Below, piece after piece: positions 27,801 to 59,832 of a DNA stretch of 64,000 nt. Below the pieces are notes generated by a model. The model saw nothing but the letters and a program-made list of their open reading frames with translations, searched no databases and had not been told where the DNA came from. A program made the position numbers and the translations under genes. Each line of letters starts with the position of its first letter. The first letter of the stretch is position 1. The stretch covers positions 124,001-188,000 of the forward strand of contig NW_024704812.1 in the NCBI RefSeq assembly GCF_018977255.1, in the 5' to 3' direction. This DNA is from Callorhinchus milii. Its lineage: Eukaryota.

Positions 27801-29812
27801 TCCTGCCACTGCCCTGTGAGGACATTCACCAGGGAGGGAGGGAGGGGTGGGGGAGAGGAAGTTGGAACATTGCAAATGGCCGCCAGCCGCACAAAATCAC
27901 CAACGGGCAGCTGACAGCCCACGTACCGCCTCTTGGACCACAATGAGCTGAATGAATGAAATGAAATCGGTCCGGGGGGCCGGATGTGGCCCACGGGCCG
28001 CCAGTTGACCTTCCTGCTCTAACTAATACCCTACAGGACTCCACAGGGCTTCCGATCACAAGCACTAAATTCCGTACCCCCATCAACCTCGCCCTCCATT
28101 GGTAGATGGACCTTCAGGTGCTACGCCCCAAAACTCTGTCACTCTCTCCCGCAATCCCTCCGTCTCACCCTCTCGTTCCCCACCTCCAAATTCTATTTAA
28201 TGACCTTCCTTTTTGATTGTGTTTACCGTCACCTCCCCCCTCCCTCTCCCACCGGCTCGGGGTCAGATTCTGCCCCTGTTAAGCGCTCCCGGACGCTACC
28301 CCACGTGAGGGATGTGGTGTAAATGCAAGTTGTTGTTGTTTACTCACTGTGAACACGCAGTTGTAAAGCTGCTGTGGCTGTTCCGTGGCTTAATTCAAAC
28401 ACAATCACTGAGTACGAACCGGAATCAGCCGGAGTCACTGTGTCCAGACGTAGAGTGGCATTGTTGGGGTAAAGCTCAGCCCGACCCTGGTAGTCTCCAA
28501 AGTACTTCACTGCTGTTCCCTGTGCTGATGCGATTGTGGAGCTGGTGTTGACTGTCCATGTTATAGTAAAACTTCCCTGTTCACTGGGCATTACCAGGAA
28601 GTACACAGATTGTCCGGCTGTGGCTTCTATGTGACTCTCAGTGACGGTCAGACTGAAAGCTCCCACCTGCTCTGTAACACATAACACACACAACAGTCAA
28701 TCAATCACACTGTAATAATAATATTAATAATAATCCTGTAGCTCAATGGTTCGAGCACTCGCCTCACAAGCGAGAGGACCCGGGTTTGATCCCCGGGCGG
28801 AAGGGCGAAATGTTGGGCAGTTTCCTTACTTCACACACACACCTCTGTTTTCATCGCAGTAAGTAGGAACCCGGTTGTTAACCGATTAGAGGCTTTTTCG
28901 GGATAACAATTCCTTCAAAGAAATAATAAATTGATGACTCAAATCATGACTGTTCGTGGGCACTACAGTGCACACTGTATAAATGAATAATTATTAATAT
29001 TATATTAATAGTCCTTGCATTTGATCACGTCTTATCACGTCTTTGAGACGTCTGAAAGCGCTTCACGGGGTGTACTGTAAAGTGAATTATTGTATATTTT
29101 GTGGGTGAACCCTTTCAGCCAATTGTACACAATAGCGACCCACACAGAGCTGTGGATTGAGTGACCAATTTTTTTATTTTGAAGGAATTATTATCCCCAG
29201 AGAAGCGATCCGCCAACCGACCAACAAGTGGTTCGTACTTATTGTTCGGTAAATAGAGGCGCGTGTGTGTGGAGTAAGGAAACTTGCCCAACCTCTCGCC
29301 CTGTGCCGCCCGGGAATCAAACCCAGGACTCTCACTTTCGAGGCGAGTGCTCCAACCACTGAGCTACAGGACTCCACAATTCAGAACAATTCTGTGGAAA
29401 CACCGCCTCAGTGAGAGAGTGGGAAACGGGATCCCGAAGGAGACAGACGGCGGAAGCAGAAAATGTCATTTATTTCAAGATCAAATTGGATAGATTTCTG
29501 CAAGAAAATAATATCTCAGGATACAGTATATACACACACAGACACACAGACATAGACACAGAGAAAGGAGACACACAGACTCACACACACCAAGACACAG
29601 AGAGAGACAGAGACACACACACAGACAGAGAGACACACACACACACACACACACGTATATAGTTTGGGACACGATATGTGTAGCGACTGCCAGGATGGTG
29701 GGGGATGAACAAGATGGACCTTTGCTTATGTTGTTACCAGTAACTCACCCAAATTAGTGACCAGAATGAGCAGAGCAGCCACCAACATCCTCGCGGCTGG
29801 AAACCACCACAT
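18828..29812 (-). CDS. Copy B: CEACAM/VSIG10L-like ITAM receptor, 7 Ig domains; 3' exons frameshifted as assembled
   Basis: Intact exons: leader 29812-29749; V 28671-28348; A1 27151-26867; B1 26232-25942; A2 25179-24895; B2 22992-22702; cyt2 19609-19565. One base short: C 22170-21932; D 21589-21276; TM 20790-20693; cyt1 19987-19933. cyt3 18890-18828 has +1/-1. Confidence 0.8.
24113..24420 (+). mobile_element. tRNA-derived SINE, near full length with internal deletion (also about 39141-39450 and 54334-54640)
   Basis: GGAGTCCTGTTGCTCAGTGG head through to the ...GCGGCATCAAATG-AT-rich tail. Confidence 0.8.
25495..25640 (-). mobile_element. CR1 reverse-transcriptase fragment (also about 40525-40670, 55710-55850)
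   Basis: DTKLRKVVNSEEESNRLQEDIDRLVTWADMMKFNVEKCKVMYFG, the region just after the CR1 YADD motif. Confidence 0.85.
28735..28985 (+). mobile_element. tRNA-derived SINE (DeuSINE/SINE2-like), head and body
   Basis: Head TAGCTCAATGGTTCGAGCACTCGCCTCACAAGCGAGAGGACCCGGGTTTGATCCCCGGGCGG with Pol III A/B boxes, followed by the family body. Dozens of copies in the window. Confidence 0.85.
29000..29376 (-). mobile_element. tRNA-derived SINE (homologues about 43950-44327, 59130-59493)
   Basis: Reverse-oriented family copy in the leader-V intron of B, C and D. Confidence 0.8.
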
Positions 29813-29943
29813 ATACACGTTAGGGAGAGAGAAACAGAGACAAACTAAATATGGGCTGTCACCTGAACGCAGGGCAGAGTCTGCTGTTAATCATTACTGT
29901 TACTGTGGAGAGACCCTGACACTGGCTCTAATGGCACCCGGTG

Positions 29944-30003
29944 CACTTTCACTTTGTCAGGAATTAATATGTTAATTTATGAGATGAATAGTTTTACTTC
30001 CTG
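29944..30003 (-). promoter_or_regulatory. Putative IRF-E/ETS promoter of copy B
   Basis: cactttcacttt at 29944-29955; acttcctg near 29996-30003. Confidence 0.5.
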
Positions 30004-32472
30004 TAAGACACACTTTACGCCCTCACTATTTTTAATATTATTATAATAATAGTCCTTGCGTTTGACGCAGCGCCTTATCACGTTTTTGAGATGTCTCAAA
30101 GCACTTCACAGAATACACTGTGAATTGTAGTGACTGTGTGTTTGGTGCGCGATACGCGGCAGCTAATTGCGCACAGCAACGTTCCACAAACTATATGACC
30201 CAATAGTTAACTTTTCTTTTAATAATCCTGCATTTGATACGGTGCCTTATCACATCTTCGAGATGCCTCAAAGCGCTTCATAGGATACGCTGTAAAGTGG
30301 AGTGACTGTGTGTTTTGGCGGCTGAAACATGGCAGCCAATTGCACACAGTGACGTCTCCACAAACAGTTGTGGATTGAGTGACCACATTATTGTTATTTT
30401 TTGAAGTTATTATTACCCCCAGAAACGCATTCCGCCAATCGACTGACGACCGGGTTCCTCCTGACTGCTGGTAAACAGGGGTGTGAGTAAAAAGTGTGTG
30501 TGTGTGTGGGGTAAGGAAACTTGCTTAAGGTTTTGCCCTGACACACCTGGGAATCGAACCCAGATCCGTTCGCTTGCGAGGCGAGCGCTCTAACCCCTGA
30601 GCTACAGGGACTCCACAAGATACTCACTGAGACACAAGTTTAGTGTGTGTTTTGTGATGTGTTCAGTGACTGTTTAGGGATGTGTTCAGGGTCATGTTTC
30701 GTTACCCCATCACCCCCATCTTCGTTCGGCTCCACTGGCTCCCCATCACTGAGAGAGTACAGTTCAAGCTCCTGGTCCTCACCTTCGAAGCACTCCATGG
30801 CCTCACTCCCCCCCACCTCTGTGAACTCCTAACTAAGCCCCTACCAACCTGTCCACTCTCTCCACTCAGTAGGCTCCGGCCGGCTTCACATCTCCCACCG
30901 ATTGGCTGTCGGGCCTTCAGCCTCTCCACCCCCTCCATCGCCTCCTTCAAGGCCAGTTTCAAGATCTTCCTCTTCGACCATCACACCTTTGGTCACCGTC
31001 CTACCTTCCCCCTCCCCGTCCTCTACCCTTCCTGATCCCAACCCCCATCCTGGGTATAAACCTCTGACTGTCCAGCGCCTTGGGACGTCCTCCTGACATG
31101 AACATAATAATCATTGCATTTGATATCGAGCCTTATCACGTTGTCGAGACATCTCATTCATAGAACACACTGTAGAGTGGAGTGACTGTGTATTTTGTAG
31201 CCAAAACACGGCAACCAATTATCATGTCATTGAAGTGGGGAGACGAGGGGACATTTACGCAGCGATTTGTTACGGTCTGGAACGCACTGCCGGAAAGGGA
31301 ATTGGACAGGGACTTGAAAAGGAAAAATATGCAGAGATACGTGGTAGGAGCGGGGGAGTGGGACTGATTGGGCAGCTCTTTCAAAGAACCGGCACAGACA
31401 CGATGGGCTGAATGGCTTCCGCCTGTGCTGTAAGATTCTGTGATTCCATAATAATAATAATAATAATCATTTGATATAGCGCCTTAACACGTCGAGATCT
31501 CAGAGCTCTTCACAGAATATACTGTGAAGTGAATTGACTGTATATTTGTGGGCGAAACGCGGCAGACAATTGCGCACAGCAGTGTCCTACAAACAGTCGT
31601 GGATCGAAGCAGCCAATATATTATTTTTTTGTAAGGATTATTACCCCCAGAAAAGTAATCCACAAGTCGACTAACAACCGTATTCTTACTTACTGCAGTG
31701 TAAACAGAGGCGTGTGCGTGTGAAATAAGGACATTATGCCCCGACCCGCCCAGGAATCAAACAAAGGTCCTCTCGCTTGTGAGGCGAGTGCTGTAACCAC
31801 TGAGCTGCAGGACTCCAACGATAAAACCCCTGACAGGTAAACCACCCGGAGCTCAGTGAGCTGTGAGTTAGGAATGTCTGGAGTTAATCGCTGTACAGAT
31901 CAAAGGTTTCAGTTGGTTTGAAGCACTAATTTCATGTGGAAGTGAAAGCCATTGTAAGATTAGCTCACTCATAAAGCTGGCTCGTGGCCTCAGATTCCTG
32001 TACCTTGTCCTGTACCAGCTGAGTGGGATAATAATGGTAATAACAACAATAATAATAATAATAATAATCCTTGCATTTGATATACGCTTTTCACGTCTTC
32101 TAGACGTCTCAAAGCGCTTCACAGAATAGTGAATTGACTACATTTGTAGGTGAAACACAGCAGCCAATTGTACACAGCAGTGTCCCACAAACAGTCGTGG
32201 ATTGGAATGACCAATTTATTATTGTTTTTTTTGAGGGATTATTATCAGGGTGTGGAGTAAGGAAACTTGTCCAAGGCCTCGCCCGGCCAGGAATCGAACT
32301 CAGGTCTCTCACTAATAATAATAGTAATAATAGTAATTCTTGCAAAAAAGACAAATTGGTCACTTCAATCCGCAACTGTTTGTGGGGCACCTCTGTGCAC
32401 GTGCAATTAATTGGCTGCTGACTAACAAGCGAGGTCCTACTTACTGCTTGGTAAACAGAGGCAAACGCGTGT

Positions 32473-32602
32473 NNNNNNNNNNNNNNNNNNNNNNNNNNNN
32501 NNNNNNNNNNNNNNNNNNNNNNNNNNNNNNNNNNNNNNNNNNNNNNNNNNNNNNNNNNNNNNNNNNNNNNNNNNNNNNNNNNNNNNNNNNNNNNNNNNNN
32601 NN
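32473..32602. other. Assembly gap (130 N)
   Basis: N run. Confidence 0.99.
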
Positions 32603-33085
32603 CTACGTTTCACCCTGAATACTGAACTCCTGGTAAATAACATTAACTTCTCAGTGAGCCGATAAGTCACAACAACAACAACTTGTATTTACACAGCGCC
32701 CTTTATGAGGGTAGCGTCTCGGAGTGGTGGAGCCTGACGCAGAGCCAGTTGGAGGGGAGAGACAGGCAGAAGGTGACCGTGAGCATGGTCAAAGAGAAAG
32801 ATTTTCAGTCTTGATCTAAAAGAGGGGGAAGGATAGGAGAGGGGAGGAAAGGGGGAAAGGCGGAGGGATCGGTGGAGAGAGCTCCAAAGTCTGACAATAC
32901 GACCCCCATGATGGATCAGAGTGCACGAGGGACACGCAGGAGGCCGGAGACAGCCGAGAGGAGGCAGTGGGTAGTGGGTTGGGGGGGTCAGCAGGTCGGA
33001 GAGAGAGGTAGGGAGGTGCCAGAGCCTGAAGAGATTTGTAGATGATTGAAAGGATCTTGAAATCGATCTACGTTGTCACAGCTAT

Positions 33086-34967
33086 CTACTTCCTGGTGCC
33101 ATTACGACGTAAATTGTGATAAATATCTTTTTGGTGCTTTCCAAGGTCCTGAAACACAATGCAGATCGGACAGACCATTACTAACAACATTTTACACTGA
33201 ACCTTTCACATCAGGAGGACGTCCCAAGGACCTGGACAGTCAGGGATTTGGATCTGAGCTGTGGGTTGGGATCAGGACGGGGTGGATGGTGGCGAGGTAG
33301 GGGTTAGGAAGGTGACCAGGTTGAAGAGGAAAGTCTTGTGACAGGCCTTGAAGGAGGTGAGGGAGTGATGGGGTGGGATGGAGGGACTGTGGGATGGAGT
33401 TCCAGAGGGTGGGGCAGAGTAACTGAAGGCCCAACCGATGGTGGGGCAGGTGAGGCGGGGGATGTGAAGCAGGCCGGAGCCCGCTGAGCAGAGAGAGCGG
33501 ACAGGTTGTTAGGGGGTATGGGGAGCTGCAGAGTTAGTTCTGGATGATCTGCAGTTTGTAGAGGGAGGCGTTGGGGAGGCCGACAAGCAGGGAGGGGGCA
33601 AAGTCAAGCCTGTTTGTGGTGAACACATGGATGAGGGCCTCGGTGGCCTGCGGTGAGAGACAGTGGCGAAGCCGGGCAATATGGCGGAGGTGGGGAAGGC
33701 ATATCAGGTCATGGCACGGATGAGGGGATGAAGGACAGTTTAGGGTCGTAAAGGACAGAGTTGGGACAGCAAGAGACTGAGCCGGGCTGACACACTGTCC
33801 GTGTCAGCCATTTGTTTCCTCACCATGTAAGGGCCTGAATCCTTCTGGGAGACATTGGCAGAGGAAGCCTAAAATATAACCAAACACAGTTTAGCTATTC
33901 ATTAGCAATGTCGTTAGCAGTAAATAATAATAACCATTGCATTTCATACAGTGCCTTATCACGTCTTCATAACATCTCAAAGCGCTTCACAGGATACAAC
34001 AACAACAACAACAAGATTCCATTTATAAAGCGCCTTTCACGTCAGGAGGACGTCCCAAGCGCTGCACAGTTGGGTCATGACCCGAGCAGGGGGGAAATGG
34101 TCAGGGTAAGGGGAGGGAAGGGAGGGAGCGAGGAGGGGGAAGAGAGTCGAGAGGGGAGCTGAAGGCTCGGTCAAAGAGAAAGGTTTTGAGACCGGCCTTG
34201 AAGGAGGAAAGGGAGGAAGCGGCGAAGGCACTGGGGGATAGAGTTCCAGAGCCTGGGGGCTGAGAGGCTGAAGGCCCGACCACCGATGGTAGGGCGATTG
34301 GGGCGGGGGACGTGGAGCAGACCGGAGCCAGAGGAACGGAGGGTACGGGCAGGTAGGTAGGGGGATAGTAGGTCGGAGAGGTAGGAGGGAGCGAGGCCGT
34401 GAATGGCCTTGTAGGTGAGGATGAGGATCTTGAAATCTTGATACACGGTAAAGAGTAGTGACTGTGTGGTTTCAAAAATAATAATAATCGTTGCATTTGA
34501 TACAGTGCCTTATCACGTCTTTGAGTCGTATCAAAGGGGAGTCAATTGCCTAAGGTTTTGCCCTGTCCGGGAAACAAAACCGGATCCTCTCGCTTGAGAG
34601 GCGAGGGCTCTAACCACTGAGCGACAGGACTGCACAGCACTTACTCTGACATCAATGGTCTCGTAGTATGGTTCACCCTCTGTCTCTTGCTGTGTTTTGG
34701 CTGGAAAATAAACAACAACTTGTTTATTCAAAGGCACAGCCTCTGATGGTGGGATGGAGGGAACGAGGGACAAATAGGAGGCCGGTGTGGGGGCGGTGGG
34801 GGGTGAGCAGGTCGGAGAGGTAGGGAGGTGCCAGGGCATGAAGGGGTTTGAAAACGAGTGAGAGGATCTTGAAATCGTAGAAAATCTTGAAAATATACAA
34901 GAGTTTGTACATTTGCTGAACCGGTGAACTTGGAGAGAAACGGAGAAGGAGGCACTGATAGAGAGAC

Positions 34968-34998
<31 letters not shown>

Positions 34999-36214
34999 TT
35001 GGTAGTGAGAGATAGGGTTAAAGCCTGACAGAAAGACAAAGAGGGAGCGATTGAAAGAGAGAGGGGGAGATGGATGGATAGAGACTGATAGAGAGTGAGA
35101 TGGAGGGTGATAGAGAGACAGGGGTAGAGGCTGATAGAAAGGAGAGGGTGAAATGGAGTGGGAGAGACTGATAGAGAGAGAGAGAAAGATGGAGGGGGAG
35201 AGACTGATGGAGGAAGAGTGAGACGGAGAGGGTAGAGACTGATTGAGTTTGTGATGGAGGTGGATAGAGACTAATAGAGGGAGTGTGAGACAGAGGGGAA
35301 GAGACTGACAGAGTGAGATAAAGAGGGAGAGACTGAAAGTGAGAGAGAGTGAGACGGAGGAGGAGTGATTGATAGCGAGAGGGGGAGATGGATGGATAGA
35401 GACTGACAGAGAGTGAGATGGAGGGTGATAGAGAGAGAGGGGTAGAAACTGATAGAAAAGAGTGGGTGAAATGGAGAGGGAGAGACTGAGAGTGATGGAG
35501 GGTGACAGAGAGAAGGGGTAGAGACTGATAGAAAAGAGAGGGTGAAATGGAGGGGGAGAGGCTGATAGAGAGAGAGAGACAAAGTGGGAGAGACTGATAG
35601 TGAAAGAGAGTGAGATGGAGGGGCTAGAGACAGATAGAGAGAGACGGAGGGGTAGAGACTGGCAGAGAGAGAGGACAGTGAGAGGGTGAGTGGCTGAGGG
35701 GGTCTGGACTGGTATATAAACAACAGAACATGAAGGTGAAAGGTTTTCCTGTGTATATACGGCCTCACCTTCCTTACGTTTCCTGTAAACGTACACCACA
35801 GCGAGTGTTGCAATGACCACCACAGCCACAGCCCCCACTATTGTCCCCACTATCAGGGCCACATTCACTGCGGAGAGAAACACCTTCACTGTCTCTCTAT
35901 TAGATTATACTCTCGTAACATAGAGACCACAGCACAGACCTCATGTAAATCATAGCAATCCTCGCATTTGATACAGCGCCTTATCACGTTGTTGTAAAGT
36001 GTAGTAACTGTGTATTTTGTGGGCGGAACACAGCAGCCAATTGCGCACAGCGGTGACCCACAAACAGTCGTGGATTGATTGACCAGATTTTTTGTTTTTT
36101 TGGAGGGATTATGACCCCCAGAAAGTGAACCGTCAATTGACTAACAGCGGGTTCCTACCTACTGCTGATAAACAGAGGTGCACATCTGTGTGTGTATGTG
36201 TGTCTATGTGTGTC

Positions 36215-36252
<38 letters not shown>

Positions 36253-39200
36253 TGTGGGTGTGTGTCTGTGTGTGTGTCAAAATATCATAACTTACCTCCG
36301 CCTTTCAAAGTCACGTCAAATTGGAAGAAGTTCTCTCCCATTGCGTTAGTGACACGGCATTGATATGTGCCCTGATCGGTTGCCTGGAATTTACTGATGA
36401 GCAGTTTAGAGAAGGTTAGTCCTGAGGTGATGATGAACTTGCCGTCAGAGCCAGTGATGGAGTTGTCTTCCTTCGACCATGTAAAGTGTGCGGGCAGCAG
36501 GCCAGGGTCTGACACCCGCACTGTGTCTGTCAGTGACACGTCTAAGGTCACATCTGCCTCCTTCCCCACTTCCACCTGAGGCTCAGACCCTGACGCTCTC
36601 TGGGGTTTATCTGTGTAACAGCACAGACAGTGTTCAGCAAAACAGCAACACAGTCACCCCAACAGTCAGTAGGAATAATAATAATCCTCCTGTTTGATAC
36701 AGCGCCTTATCACGCCATCGAGACATCTTAAATCCCATCTAAAGACCTTCCTCTTCGACCAACCGCACATTCAGCCACCCTCCCACCCCAAAACCCACCC
36801 CCCCCTGCCCTCCACCCCTCCTGACCCCAACTCCCAGCTCAGGTCCAAAAACCCTGACTGTGCAGCGTCCCGGGATGTGTTTGCGACGTGAAGGGCGCTA
36901 TACAAGTGTAATTTGTCATCGTTGTTGCTGTTCAGCCCTCAAGTCCTCACCAATAACTATAGAGCATTGACTGTCAGAGACAACATGGCGTCCAACACAT
37001 GTGAAGATCTCTCGGGAGCTGAGCTGATCCTTTGTGATGGTGACATTCCCCTCGTTTGTCGCATTGACAATCGTCTGTCCGACCTTCAGCTGAAGGACAG
37101 AGTCTGGCACCCCACCAGCCCAGGAGCACATCAACACCAATGCTGTTCCTTTATCTGCTGCTCCGCATGTGATCTGCTGTGTGGGAGCCCCTTGAACAAG
37201 GCAAAGACAAACAGTCCAGTTATTGGCTCCACCTTGAGTTGTCCCCACCCTCGCCCGGCTCCACTGGCTCCCCATCCCTCAGAGGATACTGTTCAAGATC
37301 CTGGTGCTCAGCTTTAAAGCCCTCCATGGCCTCACTCCTCCCTCCCTACCTCTGTGACCTCCTAATCCCTGACCAACCGGTCCGCTCCCTCTGCTTAGCG
37401 GGCTCCGGCCTGCTCCATGTTCCCCGCCCGCCCATCCCCTTCAGCCTCTCTGACCCACCCTCTGAAACTCCCACAATCCCTCTGCCATGCCTCCCTCACC
37501 TCCTTCGAAACCTATCTCAAGATCCTCCTCTTCGACAGACCGTGCCTTCGGTCACCCTCCTACACCCATCTCCCTGCCCTCCAACCCTCCTGATAGCAAC
37601 CTCCAGCTCAGATGTGGGTCCCTGACTGTCCAGCGCCTTGAGACATCCTCCTGACGTGAAAGCCACTGTGTAAATGCCATGTGTTGTTATTTAGACAGTG
37701 CCAATTTTGACTGAGATCTAACTCACTGTACACGAGGATTGAAACCTTCTCCGTGTGGCTAATCGTGGTGTAATCATTCTTCACATTGCAAGTGTAATCC
37801 CCGCTGTTGTTGAACGTGAGGCTCTCTATAGGCAGCTGTGAGGTGTTGCCGGCAATGACTGTGGTGTTATGTGTCCACCTGTAGTTACACTCTGGGAAAC
37901 ATTTCGTCTGACAGTTGAGCGTCACTAAATCTCCCTCCTTCCCACAGTACTGTCCTGGGACCAAACTGTCACATATCACTTGCCCACTCATATATACTGT
38001 GGGTGGATCAGGGCCATCTGAAAGAAAAACATTAAGTGATGACATAGATAGATAAATGGGTGGCAGATGATAGTGTGAGAGAAACAGCCTTTTTACATGT
38101 ATCACAGACCTCCGACTGTTTGTGGGTCCCTCCTGTGCGCAATTGGCTGCCGTCCCCCGACCCACCCACCCCACCATTGGCGGGAGAGACTTCAGCCACT
38201 CTGCCCCAACCTCTGGAATCCTATCCCCCAGTCATTCCGCTTCACGCCCTCCTTAGCCTCCTTCAAGTCACGCCTCAAGACCCTCCTCTTCGACCATGCC
38301 ATCGGCCATCCCCCTTCCCCGCCCCTCCCTTCTCCCCCCGTGACTCCAGCTCGGGTCTGAAATGCTGTCACTGTCCAGTGCCTTGGGACATCCTCCCGAT
38401 GTGAAACACGCTATACAAATGTAATCCTGTTGTTGTTGTTGTGTTTCATCCATAAAATATACAGTCAATTCACTTTACAGTATATTCTGTGAAGTGATTT
38501 GAGACGTGAGGAGGTGTTTTTTTTGGAGGGGTTAATACATTCGGAAAAGTGATCTGGCAATCGACTAACAAGGGTTCCCGCTTACTGTTAGGTAAACAAC
38601 AAAATACAACAACAATAATATTACATTTATAGGGCGTCCTTAACGTCGGGAGGACGTCCCAAGACATTGGCGCTGCTAAACAGTGGGGTGTATGTGTGTG
38701 GGGGGTGGGGGTGGGGGCGAGTGTTGGGTGGAGTAATGTACCTGCCTAAGCTTTCGTCCTGACCTGCGCGGGAATCAAACCCAGGTCCTCTCGCTTGATA
38801 AGGCGATATATCAAGTGCAAGAATGATTATTATTCTGATGATCATGACTATGATCATTATTATTGTTATTATCTTTACTGTTATTGCAGCTCAGGTCACG
38901 TGAGGCTGACTTTGGGTCATGGAGTTTAAAGCGAGTCGGGGTTCCTGCTCCTGGTCCCTAAACTCCCTCTCGGGCTCAAGTGTGGGTGTTGCAGTCTGGT
39001 GGGGAGATTAGGTTTGTCTGTGGGGCCCTCTACAGTCAAGTGGCCGATTGACACTCAGATAGTGATGGGATCTTTAACCTGAACAGGCAGATAGTTTAAC
39101 GTCTCATCCAAACAGCGGCTCTTCAATGATAATAACAATAGTGGAGTCCTGTTGCTCAGTGGTTAGAGCATTTGCCTCGTAAGTGAACTTGAGTTCAATT

Positions 39201-42200
39201 CCCATCAGGGTGCGAATGCTTGGGCAAGTTTCCTTACTCCACACGCCTGATAATAACCCCTCCAGAAAGAAACTAATAGTAAATTGGGCACTTCAATCCA
39301 CGGCTGTTTTGGGACGACGCTGTGTGCAATTGTGTTTCACCCACAAATATACAGTCAATTCACTTTACAATATATTCTGTGAAGCATTTTGAGTTGTCTC
39401 AAAGACGTAAAGAGCGCGGCATCAAATGAAAGGTTTATTATATTATTTATAGGGCAAAACATTGGGCAAGTTTCCTTACTCCGCACGCCTCTGTTTACCT
39501 CGCAGTGTGTGGGGACCCAGTTGTTAGTCGACTGATGGATCGCTTTTCCGAGGGTAAAAATTCCTTCAAAAAATAATATTAATGAATTGGTCCCTGAATC
39601 CCCAACTGTTTGTGGGACACTGCTGTGTGCAATTGGTTGACATTTTATGGAGTGGTTATTACCTCCAGAAAGTGATCCGGCAATGAACTGACAAGTAGGT
39701 TCCCACTTACTGCAGGTCAGCAGAGCCATGTCTATGTGTGTTTCTATGAGTGGAGGAAGGACTATATGAGTTCCAAGTACTGACGTGAGGCTTGAACCCA
39801 CAACCTTCTGACTTATAGAGAGCTGAGCCAGGCTGGAACAAGTAGGGATATACGTGGGCCAACTGCACTGTCCTGTTCAGCTCACGTTGATCTGGTTTTA
39901 ACACCACAGCAAATATACTCACAAGTTATCACCAGCTTCACTGGTTTGCTGCTGTCACTGTTCACCGGGTTACTGGCCGCGCAGATAAACCCTCCACTGT
40001 CGTTCCTGTGTACGGGGCTGATTGTCAGAGTGCTATTAGCTGCAGACAGTGTGTAACGTGGGGTTACAGGTAACGGGTGTCCATCCAGTGCCCAGGAATA
40101 GGTGGGGAACAATCCCATCGCTGTACACCTCAATGTCGTTGTGTCTTTATTCTCGATAAATATCTCCTTGTCTGGACTCAGGCTGATGCTTACATTGGAC
40201 AGCAGAGCTGTAAGATAAAGTGTTTCATTTCATCCGGATTTACTTTACTTAACACAAAGCTGTTCTGCTTCAGTTCAAGATCCTGGTCCTCACCTTCAAT
40301 GTCCTCTACAACCTCACTCCTCTTTCCTTACCTCCGCTCCCTCTGCTCAGCGGGCTCCGGCCTGCTTCATGCCCCCCGCCCACCTGCCCCACCATCAGCG
40401 GTTGGGCCTTCAGCCTCTCTGCCCCAATCCACGACTGTTTGTGGGACACTGCTGTGTGCAATTGGCTGCAGAGTTTCGCCCACAAAATAGACCGGCAATT
40501 CACTTTACAGTATATCGTCCCAAAATACATCACTTTGCACTTCTCCACATTAAACTTCATCATGTCTGCCCATGTTACCAGTCTGTCTATGTCCTCTTGC
40601 AGTCTGTTACTCTCCTCCTCACTGTTTACTACTTTTCTTAGCTTAGTATCATGTGTGTGGCTCCTGATCACACACTAAACTCTGTACCCCCATCACCCCA
40701 GTCCTGCCCAGGCTCCAAACTTGGCAATTGTGCTCTCTATACCCAAGTCCAGGCCACCTTAAAGACCCATTTCAAGGCCTTCCTCTTCGACCGGCCATGC
40801 CTCCAGTCATCCTTCTATTCCAACCCTACCCGCCCTCCACCCCTCCTTATCCCAACCCCCACCTCGAGTGCGGATCCCTGACTATCCAGTGCCTTGGGAC
40901 GTCGTCCTGATATGAAAGCCACTGTTGTTGTTTACACCATGACATTTTTGACTGAGATAACTAACTCACTGTACACGAGGATTGAAACCTTCTCCGTGCG
41001 GCTAATCGTGGTGTAATCATTCTTCACATTGCAAGTGTAATCCCCGCTGTTGTTGAACGTGAGGCTCTCTATAGGCAGCTGTGAGGTGTTGCCGGCAATG
41101 ACTGTGGTGTTATGTGTCCACCTGTAGTTACACTCTGGGAAACATTTCGTCTGACAGTTGAGGGTCATCAAATCTCCCTCCTTCCCACAGTACTGTCCTG
41201 GGACCAAACTGTCACATATCACCTGCCCACTCACAATAAAGGTGAGTGGATCAGGGCCATCTGAAAGAAAAAGCATTAAACTATGGCATAGATAGATAAA
41301 TGGATGGCAGATGATAGTGTGAGAGAAACAGTCTTTTTACATGTATCACAGACCTCTGACTGTTTGTGGGTCGCTGCTGTGTGCAATTGGCTGCTGCGTT
41401 TTGCTCATAACATATAGTCAATTCACTTTACAGTGTATTCTGTGAAGCGTTTCAGTCGTCCAGAAGACGTGAAAAGCGCTGTATCAAATGCAAGGATTAT
41501 TATATTATTGATAGAGAAAAACGTCGGCCAAGTTTCCCTACTCCCAAACACACCGTCTGTTTACTGAGCAGTAATTAGGAACCCGGTTATTAGTCGATTG
41601 GTGGGAATCAAACCAAAGTGCTCTCACTTGCGAGGTGAGGGCTCCAACCACGACAGGACCCCACTGTTTGTTTCTCTATTCACAGCATCAAACCCCAATG
41701 TAGAATATTCCAGCATTGCATTGGCGCTTCAGTCTGGACTACATGAGTTCCAAGTACTGACGTGAGGCCACAACCTTCTGACTTATAGAGAGCTGAGCCA
41801 GGCTGGAACAAGTAGGGATATACGTGGGCCAACTGCACTGTCCTGTTCAGCTCACGTTGATCTGGTTTTAACACAACAGAGCAAATATACTCACAAGTTA
41901 TCACCAGCTTCACTGGTTTACTGCTGTCACTGCCCACCAGGTAACTGGCCGTGCAAATAAACCCTCCACTGTCGCTCCTGTGTACGGGGCTGATTGTCAG
42001 AGTGCTATTATCTGCAGACAGTGTGTAACGTGGGGTTAGAGGTAACGGGTTTCCATCCAGTGCCCAGGAATAGGTGGGGAACGATCCCATCGCTGTACAT
42101 CTCAGTGTCACTGTGTCTTCATTCTCGATAAATATCTCCTTGTCTGGACTCAGGCTGATGCTCACATTGGACACCAGGGCTGTAAGATAACGCATTTCAT

Positions 42201-44663
42201 TTCATTCAGAAACTTGTTCCAATTCACTTCACTGACACAGATCTGTTCAGAGTCACTTTGCTGAACCCTACACTTTATTTCTGACGCTGTTTGTTATGAT
42301 TCACTGTTTATTCAGGTCTCAGTCTGGCTCATTTGGTAGCACAATTTTATGGTTTAAAGTCACACTCTGGGAGCTCACAGTCCAGGTTTATTGGCTTAAT
42401 GAATGAGATGAAATGGGCCCTTTACTGCAGTCTATCAGGAAGGCAGAGCAAGTGTGTCTCTGCTCCTCTCTCTCTCCTCCTCTCTCCCCACCACCCACTC
42501 CCCAACCCCACTCTCTCATTCCCTCTCTCCCCTCTCACTCTTCCCGACCTTGCCCTCTCTTTCCCACTCTTTCCCCCTTCTCTTTCCCCTTCTCTCCCTT
42601 CCTCTCTCCCCTCTCCCTTCCCCTCTCTCCCCCTTATCTTTCATGCCTCCCTCTCTTCTCCCTCTCTCTCTCCCCTCTCTCTCTCCCAATCACTCTCTCC
42701 CAATCAGCAGTGGTAGGAGCCCAAGGACACAGTTGGTAAGAGACTCATTTGCCTTCCTGACAGACTGCAGTAAGGGCTCTGCTCGCTGGATTCTCCCAAA
42801 CGCCGGCTCCTGCCACTGCCCTGTGAGGACGTTCCCCAGGGAGGGAGGGAGGGGTGGGGGAGAGGAAGTTGGAACATTGCAAATGGTCGCCGGCCGCACA
42901 AAATCACCAACGGGCAGCTGACAGCCCATGTACCGCCTGTTGGACCACACTGAGCTGAATGAATGAAATGAAATCGGTCCGGGGGCCATCACACCCTCCT
43001 GTTTGCCCCTCGGCCCCTTCCGCTCCATCATCGGTGGCTGTATTTTCAGCTGTTACGCCCTGAAAGTCTGTCACTCTCTCCCTGTCAATCCCTCCGTCTC
43101 CCCCTCTCGTTCCCCACCTTCAAATCCCACCTAATATCCTTCCTTTTTGATTGTGTTTACCGTCACCTCCCCCCTCCCTCTCCCACCGGCTCGGGGTCAG
43201 ATTCTGCCCCTATCAAGTGCTCTCGGACGCTACCCCACGTGAGGGATGTGGTGTAAATGTAAGTTGTTGTTGTTGTTTACTCACTGTGAACACGCAGTTG
43301 TAAAGCTGCTGAGGCTGATCCGTGGTTTAATTCAAACACAGTCACTGAGTACGAACCGGAATCAGCCGGAGTCACTGTGTCCAGACGTAGAGTGGCATTG
43401 TTGGGGTAAAGCTCAGCCCGACCCTGGTAGTCTCCATAGTACTTCACTGTTGTTCCCTGTGCTGCTGCGATTGTGGAGCTGGTGTTGACTGTCCATGTTA
43501 TAGTAAAACTTCCCTGTTCACTGGGCATTACCAGGAAGTACACAGATTGTCCGGCTGTGGCTTCTATGTGACTCTCAGTGACGGTCAGACTGAAAGCTCC
43601 CACCTGCTCTGTAACACACAACACACACAACAGTCAATCTCCAGGAAATCTCACAATATAAAAATAATAATATTAATAATAATCCTGCAGTTATTGTTCA
43701 AGCACTCGTCTCGCAAGTGAGGAGACCCAGATTTGATCCCCGGGCGGAAGGGCGAAACGTTGGGCAGTTTCCTTACTTCACACACACGCCTCTGTTTGCT
43801 TCGCAGTAAGTAGGAACCCGGTTGTTAACCGATTAGAGGCTTTATCGGGATAACAATTCCTTCAAAAAAGTAATAAATTGATGACTCAAACCATGACTGT
43901 TTGCGGGCACTACAGTGCACACTGTATAAATGGAATGATTATTAATAGTATAATAATAATCTTTGCATTTCATATAGTGCCTTATCACGTCTTTGAGACG
44001 TCTGAAAGCGCTTCACGGGGTGTAATGTAAATTGAATTATTGTATATTTTGTGGGTGAACCCTTTCAGCCAATTGTACACAATAGTGTCCCACACAGAGC
44101 TGTGGATTGAGTGACCAATTTTTTTTATTTTGAAGGAATTATTATCCCCAGAGAAGCGATCCGCCAACCGACCAACAAGTGGTTCCTACTTATTGTTCGG
44201 TAAATAGAGGCGCGTGTGTGTGGAGTAAGGAAACTTGCCCAACCTCTCGCCCTGTGCCGCCCGGGAATCAAACCCAGGACTCTCACTTGCGAGGCGAGTG
44301 CTCCAACCACTGAGCTACAGGACTCCACAATTCAGAACAATTCTGTGGAAACACGACCTCAGTGAGAGAGTGGGAAACGGGATCCCGAAGGAGACAGACG
44401 GCGGAAGCAGAAAATGTCATTTATTTCAAGATCAAATTGGATAGATTTCTGCAAGAAAATAATATCTCAGGATACAGTATATAGACACACACACACAGAC
44501 ACACAGTATATAGTTTGGGACACGACATGTGTAGCGACTGCCAGGACGGTGGGAGATGAACGAGATGGACCTTTGCTTATGTTGTTACCAGTAACTCACC
44601 CAAATTAGTGACCAGAATGAGCAGAGCAGCCACCAACATCCTCGCGGCTGGAAACCACCACAT
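33086..44663 (-). CDS. Copy C: intact CEACAM/VSIG10L-like activating receptor, 785 aa (SP-V-A-B-A-B-C-D-TM-ITAM tail)
   Basis: 12 exons: 44663-44600, 43608-43285, 42179-41895, 41260-40970, 40207-39923, 38017-37727, 37190-36951, 36610-36296, 35867-35769, 34700-34645, 33868-33824, 33148-33086. Total 2358 nt, open frame, GT-AG boundaries. CEACAM-like hallmarks: Cys-less V domain with GRAELYPNNATL and DSGSY, and the 'ITYGPDP' junction. The CxWxGGxP domain is VSIG10-like. Confidence 0.9.
33999..34439 (-). mobile_element. Young 5'-truncated L2 insertion (441 bp) with GATACA flanking direct repeat
   Basis: Open frame FKILILTYKAIHGLAPSYLSDLLSPYLPARTLRSSGSGLLHVP...APRLWNSIP; (TTG)n tail. Empty site caggatacacgg in copies A and B. 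Confidence 0.9.
34930..35700. repeat. Purine-rich imperfect minisatellite (gagactgatagagagag...) in the TM-cyt1 intron (also 6490-6935, 20210-20620, 50160-50900)
   Basis: Recurrent gactgatagagag units. Intron lengths are 737, 705, 1068 and 1052 nt in A, B, C, D. Confidence 0.9.
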
Positions 44664-57400: not shown

Positions 57401-59832
57401 AACTTGTTCAATTCACTTCACTGACACAGACTGTTCAGAGTCACTTTGCTGAACCCTACACTTTATTTCTGACGCTGTTTGTTATGATTCACTGTTTATT
57501 CAGGTCTCAGTCTGGCTCATTTGGTAGCACAATTTTATGGTTTAAAGTCACACTCTGGGAGCTCACAGTCCAGGTTTATTGGCTTAATGAATGAGATGAA
57601 ATGGGCCCTTTACTGCAGTCTATCAGGAAGGCAGAGCAAGTGTGTCTCTGCTCCTCTCTCTCTCCTCCTCTCTCCCCCACCACCCACTCCCCAACCCCAC
57701 TCTCTCATTCCCTCTCTCCCCTCTCACTCTTCCCGACCTTGCCTCTCTTTCCCACTCTCTCCCCCTTCTATTTCCCCTCTCCCTCCCCTTCTCTCCCCCC
57801 CCCTCTCTCCCCTCTCCCTTCCCCTCTCTCCCCTTATCTTTCATGCCTCCCTCTTCTCCTCTCTCTCTCCCCCTCTCTCTCCCAATCTCTCTCCCAATCT
57901 GCAGTGGTAGGAGCCCAAGGACACAGTTGGTAAGAGACTCATTTGCCTTCCTGACAGACTGCAGTAAAGGCTCTGCTCGCTCGGATTCTCCCAAACGGCT
58001 CCTGCCACTGCCCTGTGAGGACGTTCACCAGGGAGGGAGGGAGGGGTGGGGGAGTGGAAGTTGGAACATTGCAAATGGTCGCCGGCCGCACAAAATCACC
58101 TCCGGGCAGCTGACAGCCCATGTACCGCCTGTTGGACCACACTGAGCTGAATGAATGAAATGAAATTGGTCCGGGGGCCATCACACCCTCCTGTTTGCCC
58201 CTCGGCCCCTTCCGCTCCATCATCGGTGGCTGTATTTTCAGCTGTTACGCCCTGAAAGTCTGTCACTCTCTCCCTGTCAATCCCTCCGTCTCCCCCTCTC
58301 GTTCCCCACCTTCAAATCCCACCTAATATCCTTCCTTTTTGATTGGTTTACCGTCACCTCCCCCTCTCCTCTCCACCGGCTCGGGTCAGATTCTGCCCTA
58401 TCAAGTGCTCTCGGACGCTACCCCACGTGAGGGATGTGGTGTAAATGTAAGTTTGTTGTTTGTTTACTCACTGTGAACACGCAGTTGTAAAGCTGCTGTG
58501 AGCTGATCCGTGGTTTAATTCAAACACAGTCACTGAGTACGAACCGGAATCAGCCGGAGTCACTGTGTCCAGACGTAGAGTGGCATTGTTGGGGTAAAGC
58601 TCAGCCCGACCCTGGTAGTCTCCATAGTACTTCACTGTTGTTCCCTGTGCTGCTGCGATTGTGGAGCTGGTGTTGACTGTCCATGTTATAGTAAAACTTC
58701 CCTGTTCACTGGGCATTACCAGGAAGTACACAGATTGTCCGGCTGTGGCTTCTATGTGACTCTCAGTGACGGTCAGACTGAAAGCTCCCACCTGCTCTGT
58801 AACACAACACACACAACAGTCAATCTCCAGGAATCTCACAATATAAAAATAATAATATTAATAATAATCCTGCAGTTATTGTTCAACATCGTCTCGCAAG
58901 TGAGGAGACCCAGATTTGATCCCCGGGCGGAAGGGCGAAACGTTGGGCAGTTTCCTTACTTCACACACACGCCTCTGTTTCTTCGCAGTAAGTAGGAACC
59001 CGGTTGTTAACCGATTAGAGGCTTTTCGGGATAACAATTCCTTCAAAAAAGTAATAAATTGATGACTCAAACCATGACTGTTTGCGGGCACTACAGTGCA
59101 CACTGTATAAATGGAATGATTATTAATAGTATATAATATCTTGCATTTCATATAGTGCCTTATCACGTCTTTGAGACGTCTGAAAGCGCTTCACGGGTGT
59201 ACTGTAAATTGAATTATTGTATATTTTGTGGGTGAAACTTGGCAGCCAATTGTGCACAACAGTCCCACAAAGAGCCGTGGATTGAGTGACCTTTTTTTAT
59301 TTTGAAGGATTATTATCCCCAGAGAAGCGATCTGCCAATCGACCAACAAGTGGTTCCTACTTATTGTTCGGTAAATAGAGGCGCGTGTGTGTGGAGTAAG
59401 GAAACTTGCCCAACCTCTCGCCCTGTGCCGCCCGGGAATCAAACCCAGGACTCTCACTTGCGAGGCGAGTGCTCCAACCACTGAGCTACAGGACTCCACA
59501 ATTCAGAACAATTCTGTGGAAACACGACCTCAGTGAGAGAGTGGGAAACGGATCCCGAAGGAGACAGACGGCGGAAGCAGAAAATGTCATTTATTTCAAG
59601 ATCAAATTGGATAGATTTCTGCAAGAAAATAATATCTCAGGATACAGTATATAGACACACACACACAGACACACAGTATATAGTTTGGGACACGACATGT
59701 GTAGCGACTGCCAGGACGGTGGAGATGAACGAGATGGACCTTTGCTTATGTTGTTACCAGTAACTCACCCAAATTAGTGACCAGAATGAGCAGAGCAGCC
59801 ACCAACATCCTCGCGGCTGGAAACCACCACAT
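48306..59832 (-). CDS. Copy D: CEACAM/VSIG10L-like ITAM receptor, 7 Ig domains; V, A1 and A2 frameshifted as assembled
   Basis: Exons: leader 59832-59769; V 58796-58472 (+1); A1 57369-57086 (-1); B1 56453-56163; A2 55396-55114 (net -2); B2 53208-52918; C 52382-52143; D 51808-51494; TM 51070-50972; cyt1 49919-49864; cyt2 49088-49044; cyt3 48368-48306. Nearly identical to copy C. Confidence 0.8.
49219..49658 (-). mobile_element. Same young L2 insertion in copy D
   Basis: Same junctions and GATACA repeats (49213-49218, 49659-49664). Confidence 0.9.

What the first reader, a model, noticed from the sequence alone, without database searches (positions are those of the whole stretch)
28348..43608. 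V-domain differences between paralogues are all non-synonymous and cluster on the C'C''/FG face
Seen by manual comparison: V exons of B and C differ at 7 nt, all 7 change amino acids and none is silent (IASA/IAAA, GTAV/GTTV, KYF/KYY, and SVIVFELSHGTATA versus SVTVFELNHGSASA). Copy A has GNFSIIWKV versus GSFTITWTV and an FG segment YDFILGAASAD. Even near-identical copies 0 and A differ non-synonymously (ELG/EQG, IAS/IAT). Established: pathogen adhesins bind the GFCC'C'' face of CEACAM N domains, which evolves under positive selection. Inference: pathogen-driven diversification of a decoy or recognition surface.
Basis: partly seen in the sequence, partly recalled or inferred. Interest (0 to 1): 0.75.

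Follow-up and report, generated by a model that had tools for sequence, protein, structure and literature searches.

The report
Shark CEACAM-like receptors vary on binding face
A tandem array of elephant-shark CEACAM-like activating immune receptor genes differs between copies almost only by amino-acid changes on the ligand-binding face of the outermost domain, the pattern known from mammalian and frog CEACAMs, so it is a credible but unsurprising extension of a known host–microbe arms-race signature to the oldest jawed-vertebrate lineage.

Summary
V (N-domain) exons B (28348-28671) and C (43285-43608), minus strand, differ at 7 bases, all amino-acid-changing. All 7 lie in the C', C'', F, FG and G elements of a confident AlphaFold model.

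On its own, 7 of 7 is not significant (P about 0.1). All five window copies give 0 synonymous : 21 replacement changes (P about 0.001). Eleven copies from the same scaffold give 5:38, and a codon model gives omega about 3 (P=0.004). The other exons give omega about 0.9.

The skew comes from missing synonymous change, not from fast protein change. Adjacent intron is 8-24% diverged and the exon's synonymous sites 0%. This is the exon-restricted gene-conversion signature reported for Xenopus CEACAM N exons.

The genes are Callorhinchus milii CEACAM-like receptors: a cysteine-less N domain, CEA-type A/B domains, a TM segment and an ITAM. Gene C is intact. The frameshifts in A, B and D look like homopolymer consensus errors.

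The N run at 32473-32602 lies between genes and does not touch any coding exon.

A pathogen as the driver remains inference. Verdict: a new member of a known kind, of moderate interest.

The parts
43285..43608 (-). V (N-domain) exon of gene C, intact, 324 nt, phase 1-1
   Evidence: Splice sites read; translation. It is part of a spliced CDS identical to XP_042201585.1.
28348..28671 (-). V exon of gene B, intact. It differs from C at 7 bases, all non-synonymous.
   Evidence: The identical exon is seen again in a second copy, F1 (L001 9895-9575), apart from 1-nt indels.
13544..13867 (-). V exon of gene A (type I: GNFSIIWKV ... FILGAASAD). The frame is broken as written by 1-2 nt indels.
   Evidence: The indels are mostly homopolymer length changes.
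58472..58796 (-). V exon of gene D, equal to C except for a CT>TCA change near the 3' end (325 nt, frameshift as written)
1..145 (-). 5' part of the V exon of copy 0. The full exon continues left of the window and is identical to copy F2.
44600..44663 (-). Leader exon of gene C (MWWFPAARMLVAALLILVTNL). Homologous leaders lie at 59770-59832, 29750-29812, 15086-15145 and 1369-1431.
   Evidence: tblastn; CDS check
36296..42179 (-). Six Ig C2/I-set exons of gene C: A1 41895-42179, B1 40970-41260, A2 39923-40207, B2 37727-38017, Ig5 36951-37190, Ig6 36296-36610
   Evidence: The A1-B1 pair matches CEA A1-B1 at E=8.5e-55.
35769..35867 (-). Transmembrane exon of gene C
33086..34700 (-). Cytoplasmic exons of gene C: cyt1 34645-34700, cyt2 33824-33868, cyt3 33086-33148 (includes the stop). 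The ITAM core YMDL-x7-YHNL is split YM|DL by a phase-0 intron.
   Evidence: The motif definition and the characteristic split are from PMC5112662.
32473..32602 (.). N run (130), intergenic or 3'UTR, between the stop of gene C and the start of gene B. Letters not inferred.

Best explanation
The window (Callorhinchus milii scaffold MU249885.1:124001-188000) holds four and a bit units of a 14-15 kb tandem array.

Gene structure (shown). Each unit carries one CEACAM-like receptor gene on the minus strand, with these parts in order:
- a leader;
- a cysteine-less IgV-like N domain;
- CEA-type A and B Ig domains, arranged A-B-A-B, or A-A-B in gene A;
- two further Ig domains;
- a transmembrane segment;
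- a short tail with an ITAM core, YMDL-x7-YHNL.

Sequence history (inferred from pattern). Unequal crossing-over and gene conversion keep the copies alike. At the N exon, conversion is confined to the exon. Synonymous sites there are therefore almost identical between copies, while the introns next to the exon are 8-24% diverged. What survives or re-accumulates in the exon is almost only amino-acid change, and 25 of the 30 variable positions lie in strands C, C', C'', F and G and their loops. In human CEACAM1 this sheet makes the homodimer and binds bacterial adhesins. Some changes also switch N-glycosylation sequons on this face: N33-F-S and N55-Y-S.

Function (inference). Diversifying selection on ligand specificity acts on this face. 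The membrane-distal N domain binds a ligand, microbial or host, and the ITAM signals activation or uptake, as in CEACAM3-type decoy receptors. The array would thus offer a panel of slightly different recognition surfaces.
For: Identity and structure:
- Gene C splices to a 785-aa product identical to XP_042201585.1.
- The N domain has no Cys, and R63 and D82 align with the CEACAM1 R64-D82 salt bridge.
- The A1-B1 pair matches CEA at E=8.5e-55, CEACAM1 at 1.6e-30 and CEACAM6 at 1.4e-21, well above other Ig proteins.
- The first YxxL of the ITAM is split by a phase-0 intron, and a YxNx motif is present. Both are noted as characteristic of CEACAM ITAM tails in PMC5112662.

Selection:
- Window copies give 0 S: 21 N (P about 0.001). 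Eleven copies with indel-adjacent codons masked give 5:38 (P=0.006-0.017). Copies outside the window alone give 5:36.
- The GY94 one-ratio model gives omega 3.07 with an LRT against 1 of 8.2, P=0.004 (10 copies). It gives 2.67, P=0.015 (8 copies), and 2.49, P=0.06 (the 4 indel-free copies). The rest of the gene gives 0.92.
- The other exons give 28 S: 59 N. Fisher's test against V gives P=0.0008 (window copies) and 0.03.

Location of the changes:
- The AlphaFold model has pLDDT 94.3.
- 25 of 30 variable positions lie in C-C'' plus F-G, P=4e-6.
- The F/G positions 89, 91, 95, 97 and 99 align with CEACAM1 Q89, I91, L95, N97 and E99.

Conversion:
- V-exon dS is 0, against adjacent-intron divergence of 7.6% (B-C) and 21-24% (type I versus II). 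The expected 6-19 synonymous differences compare with 0 seen, P=0.002 to 4e-10.
- 13 of 66 site pairs fail the four-gamete test.
- The same exon-restricted pattern, with a virtual absence of synonymous mutations, is described for Xenopus ceacam N exons.

Reality of the variants: the B-type states recur in copy F1, the C-type in D, and the type I in F2.
Against: - B versus C alone is compatible with neutrality: 7 of 7, P about 0.1, at 2.2% divergence, which is similar to the unit-wide non-coding 1-3%.
- The replacement divergence of V is not higher than that of the A1/A2/B2 exons, and it is below the adjacent intron divergence. There is therefore no excess of protein change in absolute terms.
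- Copy G2 against B or C gives pS 0.050 > pN 0.037.
- Most of the synonymous changes (6 of 7 in the unmasked count) also fall in the variable segments. Part of the pattern may therefore reflect older unconverted patches.
- The B/C replacements are conservative: S/A, A/T, F/Y, I/T, S/N, T/S.
- Gene conversion violates the single-tree assumption of the codon model.
- The assembly has many 1-nt homopolymer errors: 52 indels against 29 substitutions in 10 kb between near-identical copies. No reads could be checked.
- Several pairs of copies have identical V exons and may be assembly duplicates.
- The ITAM lacks the D/E at -3, and Pfam finds nothing in the tail.
- No ligand, expression or pathogen data exist.
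Confidence: 0.6

Rival explanations
1. Relaxed constraint plus recent exon homogenisation. The N exon was recently overwritten by gene conversion in all copies. The few changes since then are neutral, tolerated only on the exposed loops and sheet, and by chance are nearly all replacements.
For: - The rest of the gene already evolves at omega about 0.9.
- pN of V is similar to that of the other Ig exons.
- The B/C changes are conservative.
- 7 of 7 alone has P about 0.1.
- G2 comparisons give pN<pS.
- The four indel-free copies give only P=0.06.
Against: - Neutral change predicts about 26-29% synonymous. Observed are 0 of 21 in the window and 5 of 43 in eleven copies (P=0.001 and 0.006-0.017).
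- The gene-wide omega of about 3 is significantly above 1 with 10 copies (P=0.004).
- Several codons carry three or four amino-acid states (37, 48, 57, 89, 94, 97).
Confidence: 0.22
2. Assembly artefact. The differences, or the copies themselves, are products of a poorly polished, partly mis-joined long-read assembly of a tandem repeat. Consensus errors, collapsed haplotypes or false duplications would then stand in for real paralogous variation.
For: - The indel:substitution ratio is 52:29 between two near-identical 10-kb copies, and 38 of the 45 one-base indels are in homopolymers.
- There are four 1-nt indels in one 285-nt exon of gene D.
- The scaffold is unplaced, and an inverted block sits next to a 30-N join.
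- Identical V exons occur in w0/F2, B/F1 and C/D.
- NCBI gene models skip across genes to avoid frameshifts.
- No short independent proteins support the B or C type.
Against: - Random substitution errors would be about 26-29% synonymous and spread over the exon, not confined to one sheet.
- Every B-, C- and type-I-specific base is reproduced in a second, separately assembled copy that differs elsewhere.
- The older 6.1.3 assembly independently yields G2-like and F3/H1-like N domains.
- B and C have no indels at all in the V exon.
Confidence: 0.1
3. Selection by host ligands, not pathogens. The C-F-G face mediates CEACAM-CEACAM homo- and heterophilic binding. Paralogues diversify to acquire distinct self-partner specificities, or to avoid cross-dimerisation.
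For: In human CEACAM1 the same residues form the homodimer interface and bind host partners as well as adhesins (PMC8013792; abstracts of PMC9525683 and of bioRxiv 10.1101/2020.07.14.199711, listed). Nothing in the sequence tells the two agents apart.
Against: - Self-recognition systems usually show co-variation and purifying selection once partners are set.
- An ITAM tail and a large, rapidly turning-over array are more typical of pathogen-facing paired or decoy receptors (PMC5112662; PMC13278318).
- This is an argument from analogy only.
Confidence: 0.2

Closest known systems
Human/primate CEACAM1-CEACAM3 (and CEACAM5/6) N domains under positive selection with gene conversion (Baker et al. 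2022, PMC8860441)
   Same: - A cysteine-less IgV-like N domain.
- Rapidly evolving sites cluster on the protein-binding C-C'-F-G surface.
- Gene conversion shuffles N-domain variants between paralogues.
- An ITAM-type member (CEACAM3) serves as a decoy.
- Shark variable positions 37, 89, 91, 95 and 97 align with S32, Q89, I91, L95 and N97.
   Different: - N-domain identity to human CEACAM1 is only about 25%.
- The shark genes have six C2/I-set domains, including two non-A/B types.
- The shark tail has a canonical YxxL-x7-YxxL core rather than the ITAM-like motif of CEACAM3.
- Selection here is inferred between paralogues of one genome, not between orthologues of many species.
- No adhesin is known.
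Xenopus ceacam paired receptors (Zimmermann & Kammerer 2016, PMC5112662)
   Same: - N exons are kept alike by gene conversion restricted to the exon, with a virtual absence of synonymous differences and poorly conserved flanking introns.
- The first YxxL of the ITAM is split by a phase-0 intron.
- A YxNx motif is present.
- The genes form large tandem clusters.
   Different: - In Xenopus the emphasis is on near-identity between inhibitory and activating partners.
- In the shark, the ITAM genes differ from each other by 2-7% replacement change.
- The N exon of the putative inhibitory-type partner (XP_042202604.1, YAxV motifs) is not on its contig, so pairing could not be tested.
Reptile CEACAM1-like ITAM decoy genes (PMC13278318, 2026 preprint)
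   Same: - The N exon is selectively more conserved at the nucleotide level than the A/B exons between paralogues.
- The tails carry an ITAM.
- The N exon shows elevated dN/dS.
   Different: A different clade. The preprint cites cartilaginous-fish CEACAMs only as existing. I found no published analysis of the elephant-shark array.
Other multigene immunoreceptor arrays with diversified V or D1 domains (KIR/LILR, SIRP, teleost NITR)
   Same: Tandem expansion, activating and inhibitory tails, concerted evolution with diversifying selection on the ligand face (from general knowledge).
   Different: - The domain types and tails differ.
- Here the A/B domains are specifically CEA-like.
- Here the N domain lacks the disulfide.

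Membership tests
CEACAM (CEA-related cell adhesion molecule) family | N-terminal IgV-like domain that lacks the canonical B-F intradomain disulfide | tested here: met
   The 107-aa N domain has no Cys, and V88 occupies the F-strand Cys position. Pfam V-set matches at E=2.7e-24. The AlphaFold model is a V-set fold, pLDDT 94.3.
CEACAM (CEA-related cell adhesion molecule) family | Conserved R64-D82 salt bridge and N70 glycosylation site of the N domain | tested here: met
   R63, D82 and N70-A-T align with human CEACAM1 R64, D82 and N70-A-S.
CEACAM (CEA-related cell adhesion molecule) family | A-type and B-type IgC2 domains homologous to those of CEA/CEACAM1 | tested here: met
   Shark A1-B1 matches CEA 1e07 residues 115-285 at E=8.5e-55, CEACAM1 at 1.6e-30 and CEACAM6 at 1.4e-21. 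The next unrelated Ig proteins score about 1e-19, over one domain only.
CEACAM (CEA-related cell adhesion molecule) family | Exon plan: leader, one exon per Ig domain with phase-1 introns, separate TM and short cytoplasmic exons; the first YxxL of the ITAM split by a phase-0 intron | tested here: met
   The feature is described in PMC5112662.
CEACAM (CEA-related cell adhesion molecule) family | Location in the conserved CEACAM locus (synteny with marker genes) | not testable with these tools
   The scaffold is unplaced (260 kb), and every part of it that I saw holds only array units.
CEACAM (CEA-related cell adhesion molecule) family | N domain closer to CEACAM N domains than to other V-set domains | tested here: inconclusive
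   By sequence against the PDB: CD276 5.8e-6, CAR 7.7e-4, CEACAM1 7.7e-4. By fold: PD-L1 TM 0.85, CEA/CEACAM1/6 N TM 0.75, though these have the highest identity at 23-28%. Full-length hits outside sharks are mostly auto-named CEACAM1/5.
CEACAM3-type decoy / paired receptor | ITAM or ITAM-like motif in the cytoplasmic tail | tested here: met
   The YMDL-GKHQKDI-YHNL sequence gives YxxL-x7-YxxL. The D/E at -3 is absent (D is at -4). Pfam finds nothing in the tail.
CEACAM3-type decoy / paired receptor | An inhibitory partner whose N domain is kept nearly identical | tested here: inconclusive
   A paralogue with a different TM and a long tail with YAQV/YAKV motifs exists (P0006/P0035). Its 16.7-kb contig starts downstream of the N exon.
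CEACAM3-type decoy / paired receptor | Binds the same microbial adhesins as the entry receptor; expressed on phagocytes | not testable with these tools
   No expression or binding data were available.
Genes under diversifying (positive) selection | dN/dS significantly above 1 at a defined surface, robust to more sequences and to recombination | tested here: inconclusive
   Omega is 2.5-3.1, P=0.004-0.06, rising in significance with more copies. The changes cluster on the surface, P=4e-6. No site model or recombination-aware test was run, dS is depressed by conversion, and reads were not checked.
VSIG10 / hemicentin / titin / CD22 (names given by automatic annotation) | Orthology to those proteins | tested here: not met
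   The names vary between models of the same array. The domain-level best matches are CEA/CEACAM. The CD22-like first-Ig Pfam match is below its cut-off (18.5 < 27).

The most novel reading that the evidence does not exclude
The CEACAM receptor/decoy arms race would date back to the base of jawed vertebrates. The features would be exon-restricted N-domain conversion, diversifying selection on the C-F-G adhesin-binding face, glycan-sequon switching on that face, and ITAM signalling. A holocephalan would then keep a tandem panel of at least ten ITAM-bearing decoy-like receptors with distinct recognition surfaces, a germline-encoded repertoire aimed at mucosal microbes.
Probability: 0.3. Interest if true: 0.6.

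Novelty: new member of a known kind. Interest (0 to 1): 0.42.

Why it matters
CEACAM N domains are a textbook host-microbe interface in mammals. The same evolutionary signature has been reported in frogs and reptiles.

Suppose it holds in an elephant shark, with an ITAM tail whose exon structure matches tetrapod CEACAMs. That would show that both the architecture and the evolutionary regime are about 450 million years old. It would also offer a natural panel of N-domain variants for asking what such receptors recognise in a basal vertebrate.

There is a practical point as well. The annotation of this scaffold is unreliable: the gene models are chimeric, and frameshifts come from homopolymer errors. 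This matters for anyone using these gene models.

Tried and rejected
- A sequence search of the N domain alone against the PDB did not single out CEACAM.
- The fold search ranked PD-L1, TIGIT and nectin V domains above CEACAM N domains, so fold alone cannot assign the family.
- Pfam found nothing in the cytoplasmic tail.
- A search for short independent proteins carrying the B or C N domain found none.
- Look-ups of P0003, P0006 and P0026 were not on record.
- The contig of the long-tail paralogue lacks an N exon, so the paired-receptor test failed for lack of data.
- I first read the frameshifts in A, B and D as pseudogenisation. I dropped this reading because two near-identical 10-kb copies differ by 52 indels and only 29 substitutions.
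- I tried using flanking intron as the neutral yardstick. The result was that the exon and its flanks do not share one history. This changes the meaning of the dN/dS ratio rather than settling it.
- I did not read the letters that the public record holds under the window's N runs.

Full report
**What the window is.**
- The 64-kb window is a tandem array of 14-15 kb units, about 4.3 copies, with genes on the minus strand.
- Homology searches place it in Callorhinchus milii (elephant shark), assembly GCA_018977255.1, unplaced scaffold MU249885.1, positions 124001-188000.
- Gene C has 12 coding exons: leader 44600-44663, V 43285-43608, A1, B1, A2, B2, Ig5, Ig6, TM, and three cytoplasmic exons ending at 33086.
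- Gene C splices to a 785-aa product identical to XP_042201585.1, which is auto-named 'hemicentin-1-like'.

**The N run, tested first.**
- The run 32473-32602 lies 484 nt below the stop codon of gene C and 2.66 kb above the start codon of gene B. It is outside every coding exon, so no reading frame crosses it.
- Both flanks align with the neighbouring unit at 0-0.8% divergence.
- The three N runs of the window sit at the same place in the unit: each ends 298-301 nt before the same repeat landmark.
- A locus fetched for another reason overlaps the sister run 47693-47822. It has no N and exactly 130 letters between identical flanks. That run is therefore masked rather than a true gap.
- I did not read those letters. 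Afterwards I used only the part of that locus that lies outside the window.
- V exons B and C lie 3.8 kb and 10.7 kb from the finding's N run, in N-free sequence.

**The observation.**
- The V exons are 324-nt phase-1/phase-1 exons with good AG and GTGAGT borders.
- B and C differ at exactly 7 bases with no indel. All 7 are replacements: S48A, A53T, F57Y, I89T, S94N, T97S, T99S (numbering from Q1 of QVGAF).
- Copies 0 and A differ at two bases in the shared 145 nt, both replacements.
Exon D has a +1 change near its end. Gene B has 1-nt deletions in its Ig5, TM and cyt1 exons, and gene D has them in A1 and A2, four of them in A2. Only gene C is open throughout.

**Are the frameshifts real?** Probably not.
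- A 10-kb copy elsewhere on the scaffold is 99.7% identical to unit B in substitutions. The two differ by 52 indels (45 of one base, 38 of those next to the same base) against 29 substitutions.
- Over V exon B plus 400 nt of intron there are 0 substitutions and about 15 gap columns.
- Such a ratio marks long-read consensus error, not evolution.
- NCBI's models work around these errors and become chimeric. One example is XP_042201590.1, which joins V and A1 of gene B to B2 through the tail of gene A.
- Substitution differences are more trustworthy. Every B-specific base recurs in copy F1, every C-specific base in D, and the type-I bases in F2.
- Reads could not be checked.

**Is the replacement excess more than chance?**
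- Random change in this exon is expected to be 26-29% synonymous, using a uniform spectrum or the intron-derived one.
- 7 of 7 alone gives P about 0.1.
- A tree-free minimum count over the five window copies gives 0 synonymous: 21 replacement changes (P=0.0008-0.0016).
- Because the finding was picked for this property, I fetched six more V exons from the same scaffold.
- Synonymous changes then appear. The count is 7:38 unmasked, and 5:38 when codons next to indels are masked (P=0.006-0.017). Copies outside the window alone give 5:36.
- A GY94 one-ratio model (IQ-TREE) gives these values for the V exon:

| Data set | omega | Test against omega = 1 |
|---|---|---|
| 10 copies | 3.07 | LRT 8.2, P=0.004 |
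| 8 copies | 2.67 | P=0.015 |
| 4 indel-free copies | 2.49 | P=0.06 |

- The other exons of genes A-D give omega 0.92 and 28 S: 59 N.

**An important qualification.**
- Replacement divergence of V (pN 0.029 for B-C, 0.06-0.07 for type I versus II) is no higher than in exons A1, A2 and B2.
- It is also three to four times lower than the divergence of the 230 nt of intron just downstream: 7.6% for B-C, 21-24% for type I versus II.
- What is abnormal is the absence of synonymous change. Six to 19 differences are expected at the intron rate and none is seen (P=0.002 to 4e-10).
- Upstream, types I and II become unalignable about 60-100 nt from the exon. By my reading of that alignment, each carries a different SINE-like insert there.
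- Thirteen of 66 informative site pairs fail the four-gamete test.
- In the unmasked count, 6 of the 7 synonymous changes lie inside the variable segments.
- Zimmermann and Kammerer describe this same pattern for Xenopus ceacam N exons. They report gene conversion 'exactly restricted to the exon', a 'virtual absence of synonymous mutations', and poorly conserved flanking introns (PMC5112662).
- The high omega is therefore best read as exon-restricted homogenisation, on top of which replacement differences at particular positions persist or re-arise.
- Even within the variable segments, F2 versus B has 14 replacement and 0 synonymous differences. By my arithmetic, about 6-7 synonymous differences would be expected there at the intron rate. 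The segments are therefore not simply old unconverted patches.

**Where the changes lie.**
- An AlphaFold2 model of the C-type domain, built on 13 aligned sequences, is confident: pLDDT 94.3, pTM 0.86.
- Its strands are A 7-9, A' 13-16, B 22-28, C 35-40, C' 44-50, C'' 53-56, D 64-67, E 72-75, F 84-92 and G 96-106.
- The seven B/C differences fall in C', C'', the C''-D turn, F, the FG loop and G.
- Over all copies, 25 of 30 variable positions lie in C-C'' (31-58) plus F-G (84-106), and 5 lie elsewhere (Fisher P=4e-6).
- On strands C, F and G the variable residues alternate (35/37/39, 89/91, 97/99/101), as expected for side chains pointing out of one sheet.
- Aligned with human CEACAM1, positions 34, 37, 89, 91, 95 and 97 correspond to F29, S32, Q89, I91, L95 and N97. 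These are documented contacts for homodimerisation and for several bacterial adhesins (PMC8013792; PMC8860441).
- Coordinates of the model were not available to me, so exposure is inferred from strand register and homology.
- Some changes switch N-glycosylation sequons on this face. N33-F-S is present in type I, F3, H1 and G1 only. N55-Y-S occurs in F3 and H1. N41-T-S is lost in F3.

**What the genes are.**
- The N domain has no cysteine and keeps the R-D salt bridge and the N70 sequon of CEACAM N domains.
- The A1-B1 pair matches CEA residues 115-285 at E=8.5e-55, CEACAM1 at 1.6e-30 and CEACAM6 at 1.4e-21, far above other Ig proteins.
- The tail reads ...YYETIDVRASSANVSQKDSGPYMDLGKHQKDIYHNLRRNGTRK. 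It contains a YxxL-x7-YxxL ITAM core. The first YxxL is split YM|DL by a phase-0 intron, and the second is a YxNx motif. Both are noted as characteristic of CEACAM ITAM tails.
- By N-domain sequence or fold alone the family cannot be told from other V-set domains. Synteny cannot be tested on this unplaced scaffold.
- A paralogue on another contig has a different TM and a long tail with YAQV/YAKV motifs, and elasmobranch relatives have true ITIMs. Its N exon is not on the contig, so pairing is untested.
- The literature available to me records CEACAM homologues in cartilaginous fishes only as existing: a skate EST and general statements. I found no analysis of this array.

**Verdict.**
There is moderate statistical evidence for diversifying selection, and it grows stronger with more copies. 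The structural localisation to the CEACAM binding face is clear, and the receptor type (ITAM) fits a decoy-like role.
- The signal rests on suppressed synonymous divergence caused by exon-restricted conversion. The assembly is error-prone and unplaced, and B versus C alone is not evidence.
- Nothing shows that the selective agent is a pathogen.
- This is a new member of a well-described kind of system, of moderate interest.

Noticed in passing
window 18198-18347, 32473-32602, 47693-47822: All three N runs sit at the same homologous place in the repeat unit, about 0.5 kb downstream of each gene's stop codon. For 47693-47822, a fetched locus of the public record has no N and exactly 130 letters between the same flanks. 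The runs therefore look masked on purpose rather than being assembly gaps. I did not read the letters.
   Followed up: partly
window 18754-28746 versus L001:1-9968; exons at 21932-22170, 20693-20790, 19932-19987, 55114-55396, 57086-57369: The assembly carries many 1-nt homopolymer indels. Near-identical copies differ by 52 indels against 29 substitutions in 10 kb. One 285-nt exon of gene D has four of them. The apparent frameshifts in genes A, B and D are most likely consensus errors, not pseudogenes.
   Followed up: yes
window 6209-28671 (genes A and B): NCBI model XP_042201590.1 ('VSIG10-like') joins V and A1 of gene B to B2, Ig5, Ig6, TM and the tail of gene A, skipping the frameshifted exons. 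Models of the same array are variously auto-named VSIG10-like, CEACAM5-like, CEACAM1-like, titin-like and hemicentin-1-like.
   Followed up: partly
window 8994-12456 (gene A): Gene A has a different domain plan: N-A-A-B instead of N-A-B-A-B. Its first A exon ends differently (...KPVALTIQ) and no B1 exon follows. Its A/B exons are about 10% diverged at silent sites from those of B-D, whereas the Ig5, Ig6, TM and tail exons are nearly identical in all genes. The unit is thus a mosaic of homogenised and non-homogenised segments.
   Followed up: partly
window 33086-33868 and homologous exons at 5102-5881, 18833-19609, 48309-49088, 63468-63533: The cytoplasmic tail carries a canonical ITAM core, YMDL-x7-YHNL. 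Its first YxxL is split by a phase-0 intron, and a further YETI motif lies upstream. The copy at 63468-63533 reads NL instead of DL after the splice.
   Followed up: partly
L004 (WEZY01003334.1, 16.7 kb) and P0006/P0035: A paralogue with nearly identical Ig5/Ig6 exons has a different transmembrane segment and a long tail with repeated D-x-Y-A-x-V motifs. It is a possible inhibitory partner of the ITAM genes. Its N exon lies beyond the contig end.
   Followed up: partly
L001:9575-11491 (record about 214.7-216.6 kb): Two V exons lie head to head, separated by a 30-N join. The inverted block is 99.7% identical to window unit B. It is either a scaffolding artefact or a real inverted duplication. 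A real one would allow intrachromosomal gene conversion, as proposed for reptile CEACAMs.
   Followed up: no
scaffold order F2-F3 ... w0-H1 (record about 215 kb/199 kb and 124 kb/111 kb): V exons w0 and F2 are identical, and the next units (H1, F3) are similar to each other. This suggests a higher-order duplication of at least two units about 91 kb apart, or redundant assembly.
   Followed up: no
window 13868-13930, 28672-28760, 43609-43700: The sequence upstream of the V exon becomes unalignable between type I and type II about 60-100 nt from the exon. By my reading of the alignment, the two types carry different SINE-like inserts there, and both have AT-rich (TTA)n and (GT)n tracts just before the acceptor.
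   Followed up: no
window 35126-35644 and 36187-36277: The intron after the TM exon holds a purine-rich 36-nt tandem array, read as S/L-rich open frames on the gene strand. A (TG)45 microsatellite lies just downstream of the Ig6 exon. A LINE reverse-transcriptase fragment lies between B1 and A2 (40309-40674).
   Followed up: no
V-exon codons 33-35, 41-43, 55-57 (e.g. window 43496-43504 in C, 13755-13763 in A): Variable positions create or destroy N-glycosylation sequons on the variable face. N33-F-S occurs only in type I/F3/H1/G1 copies, N55-Y-S in F3/H1, and N41-T-S is lost in F3.
   Followed up: partly
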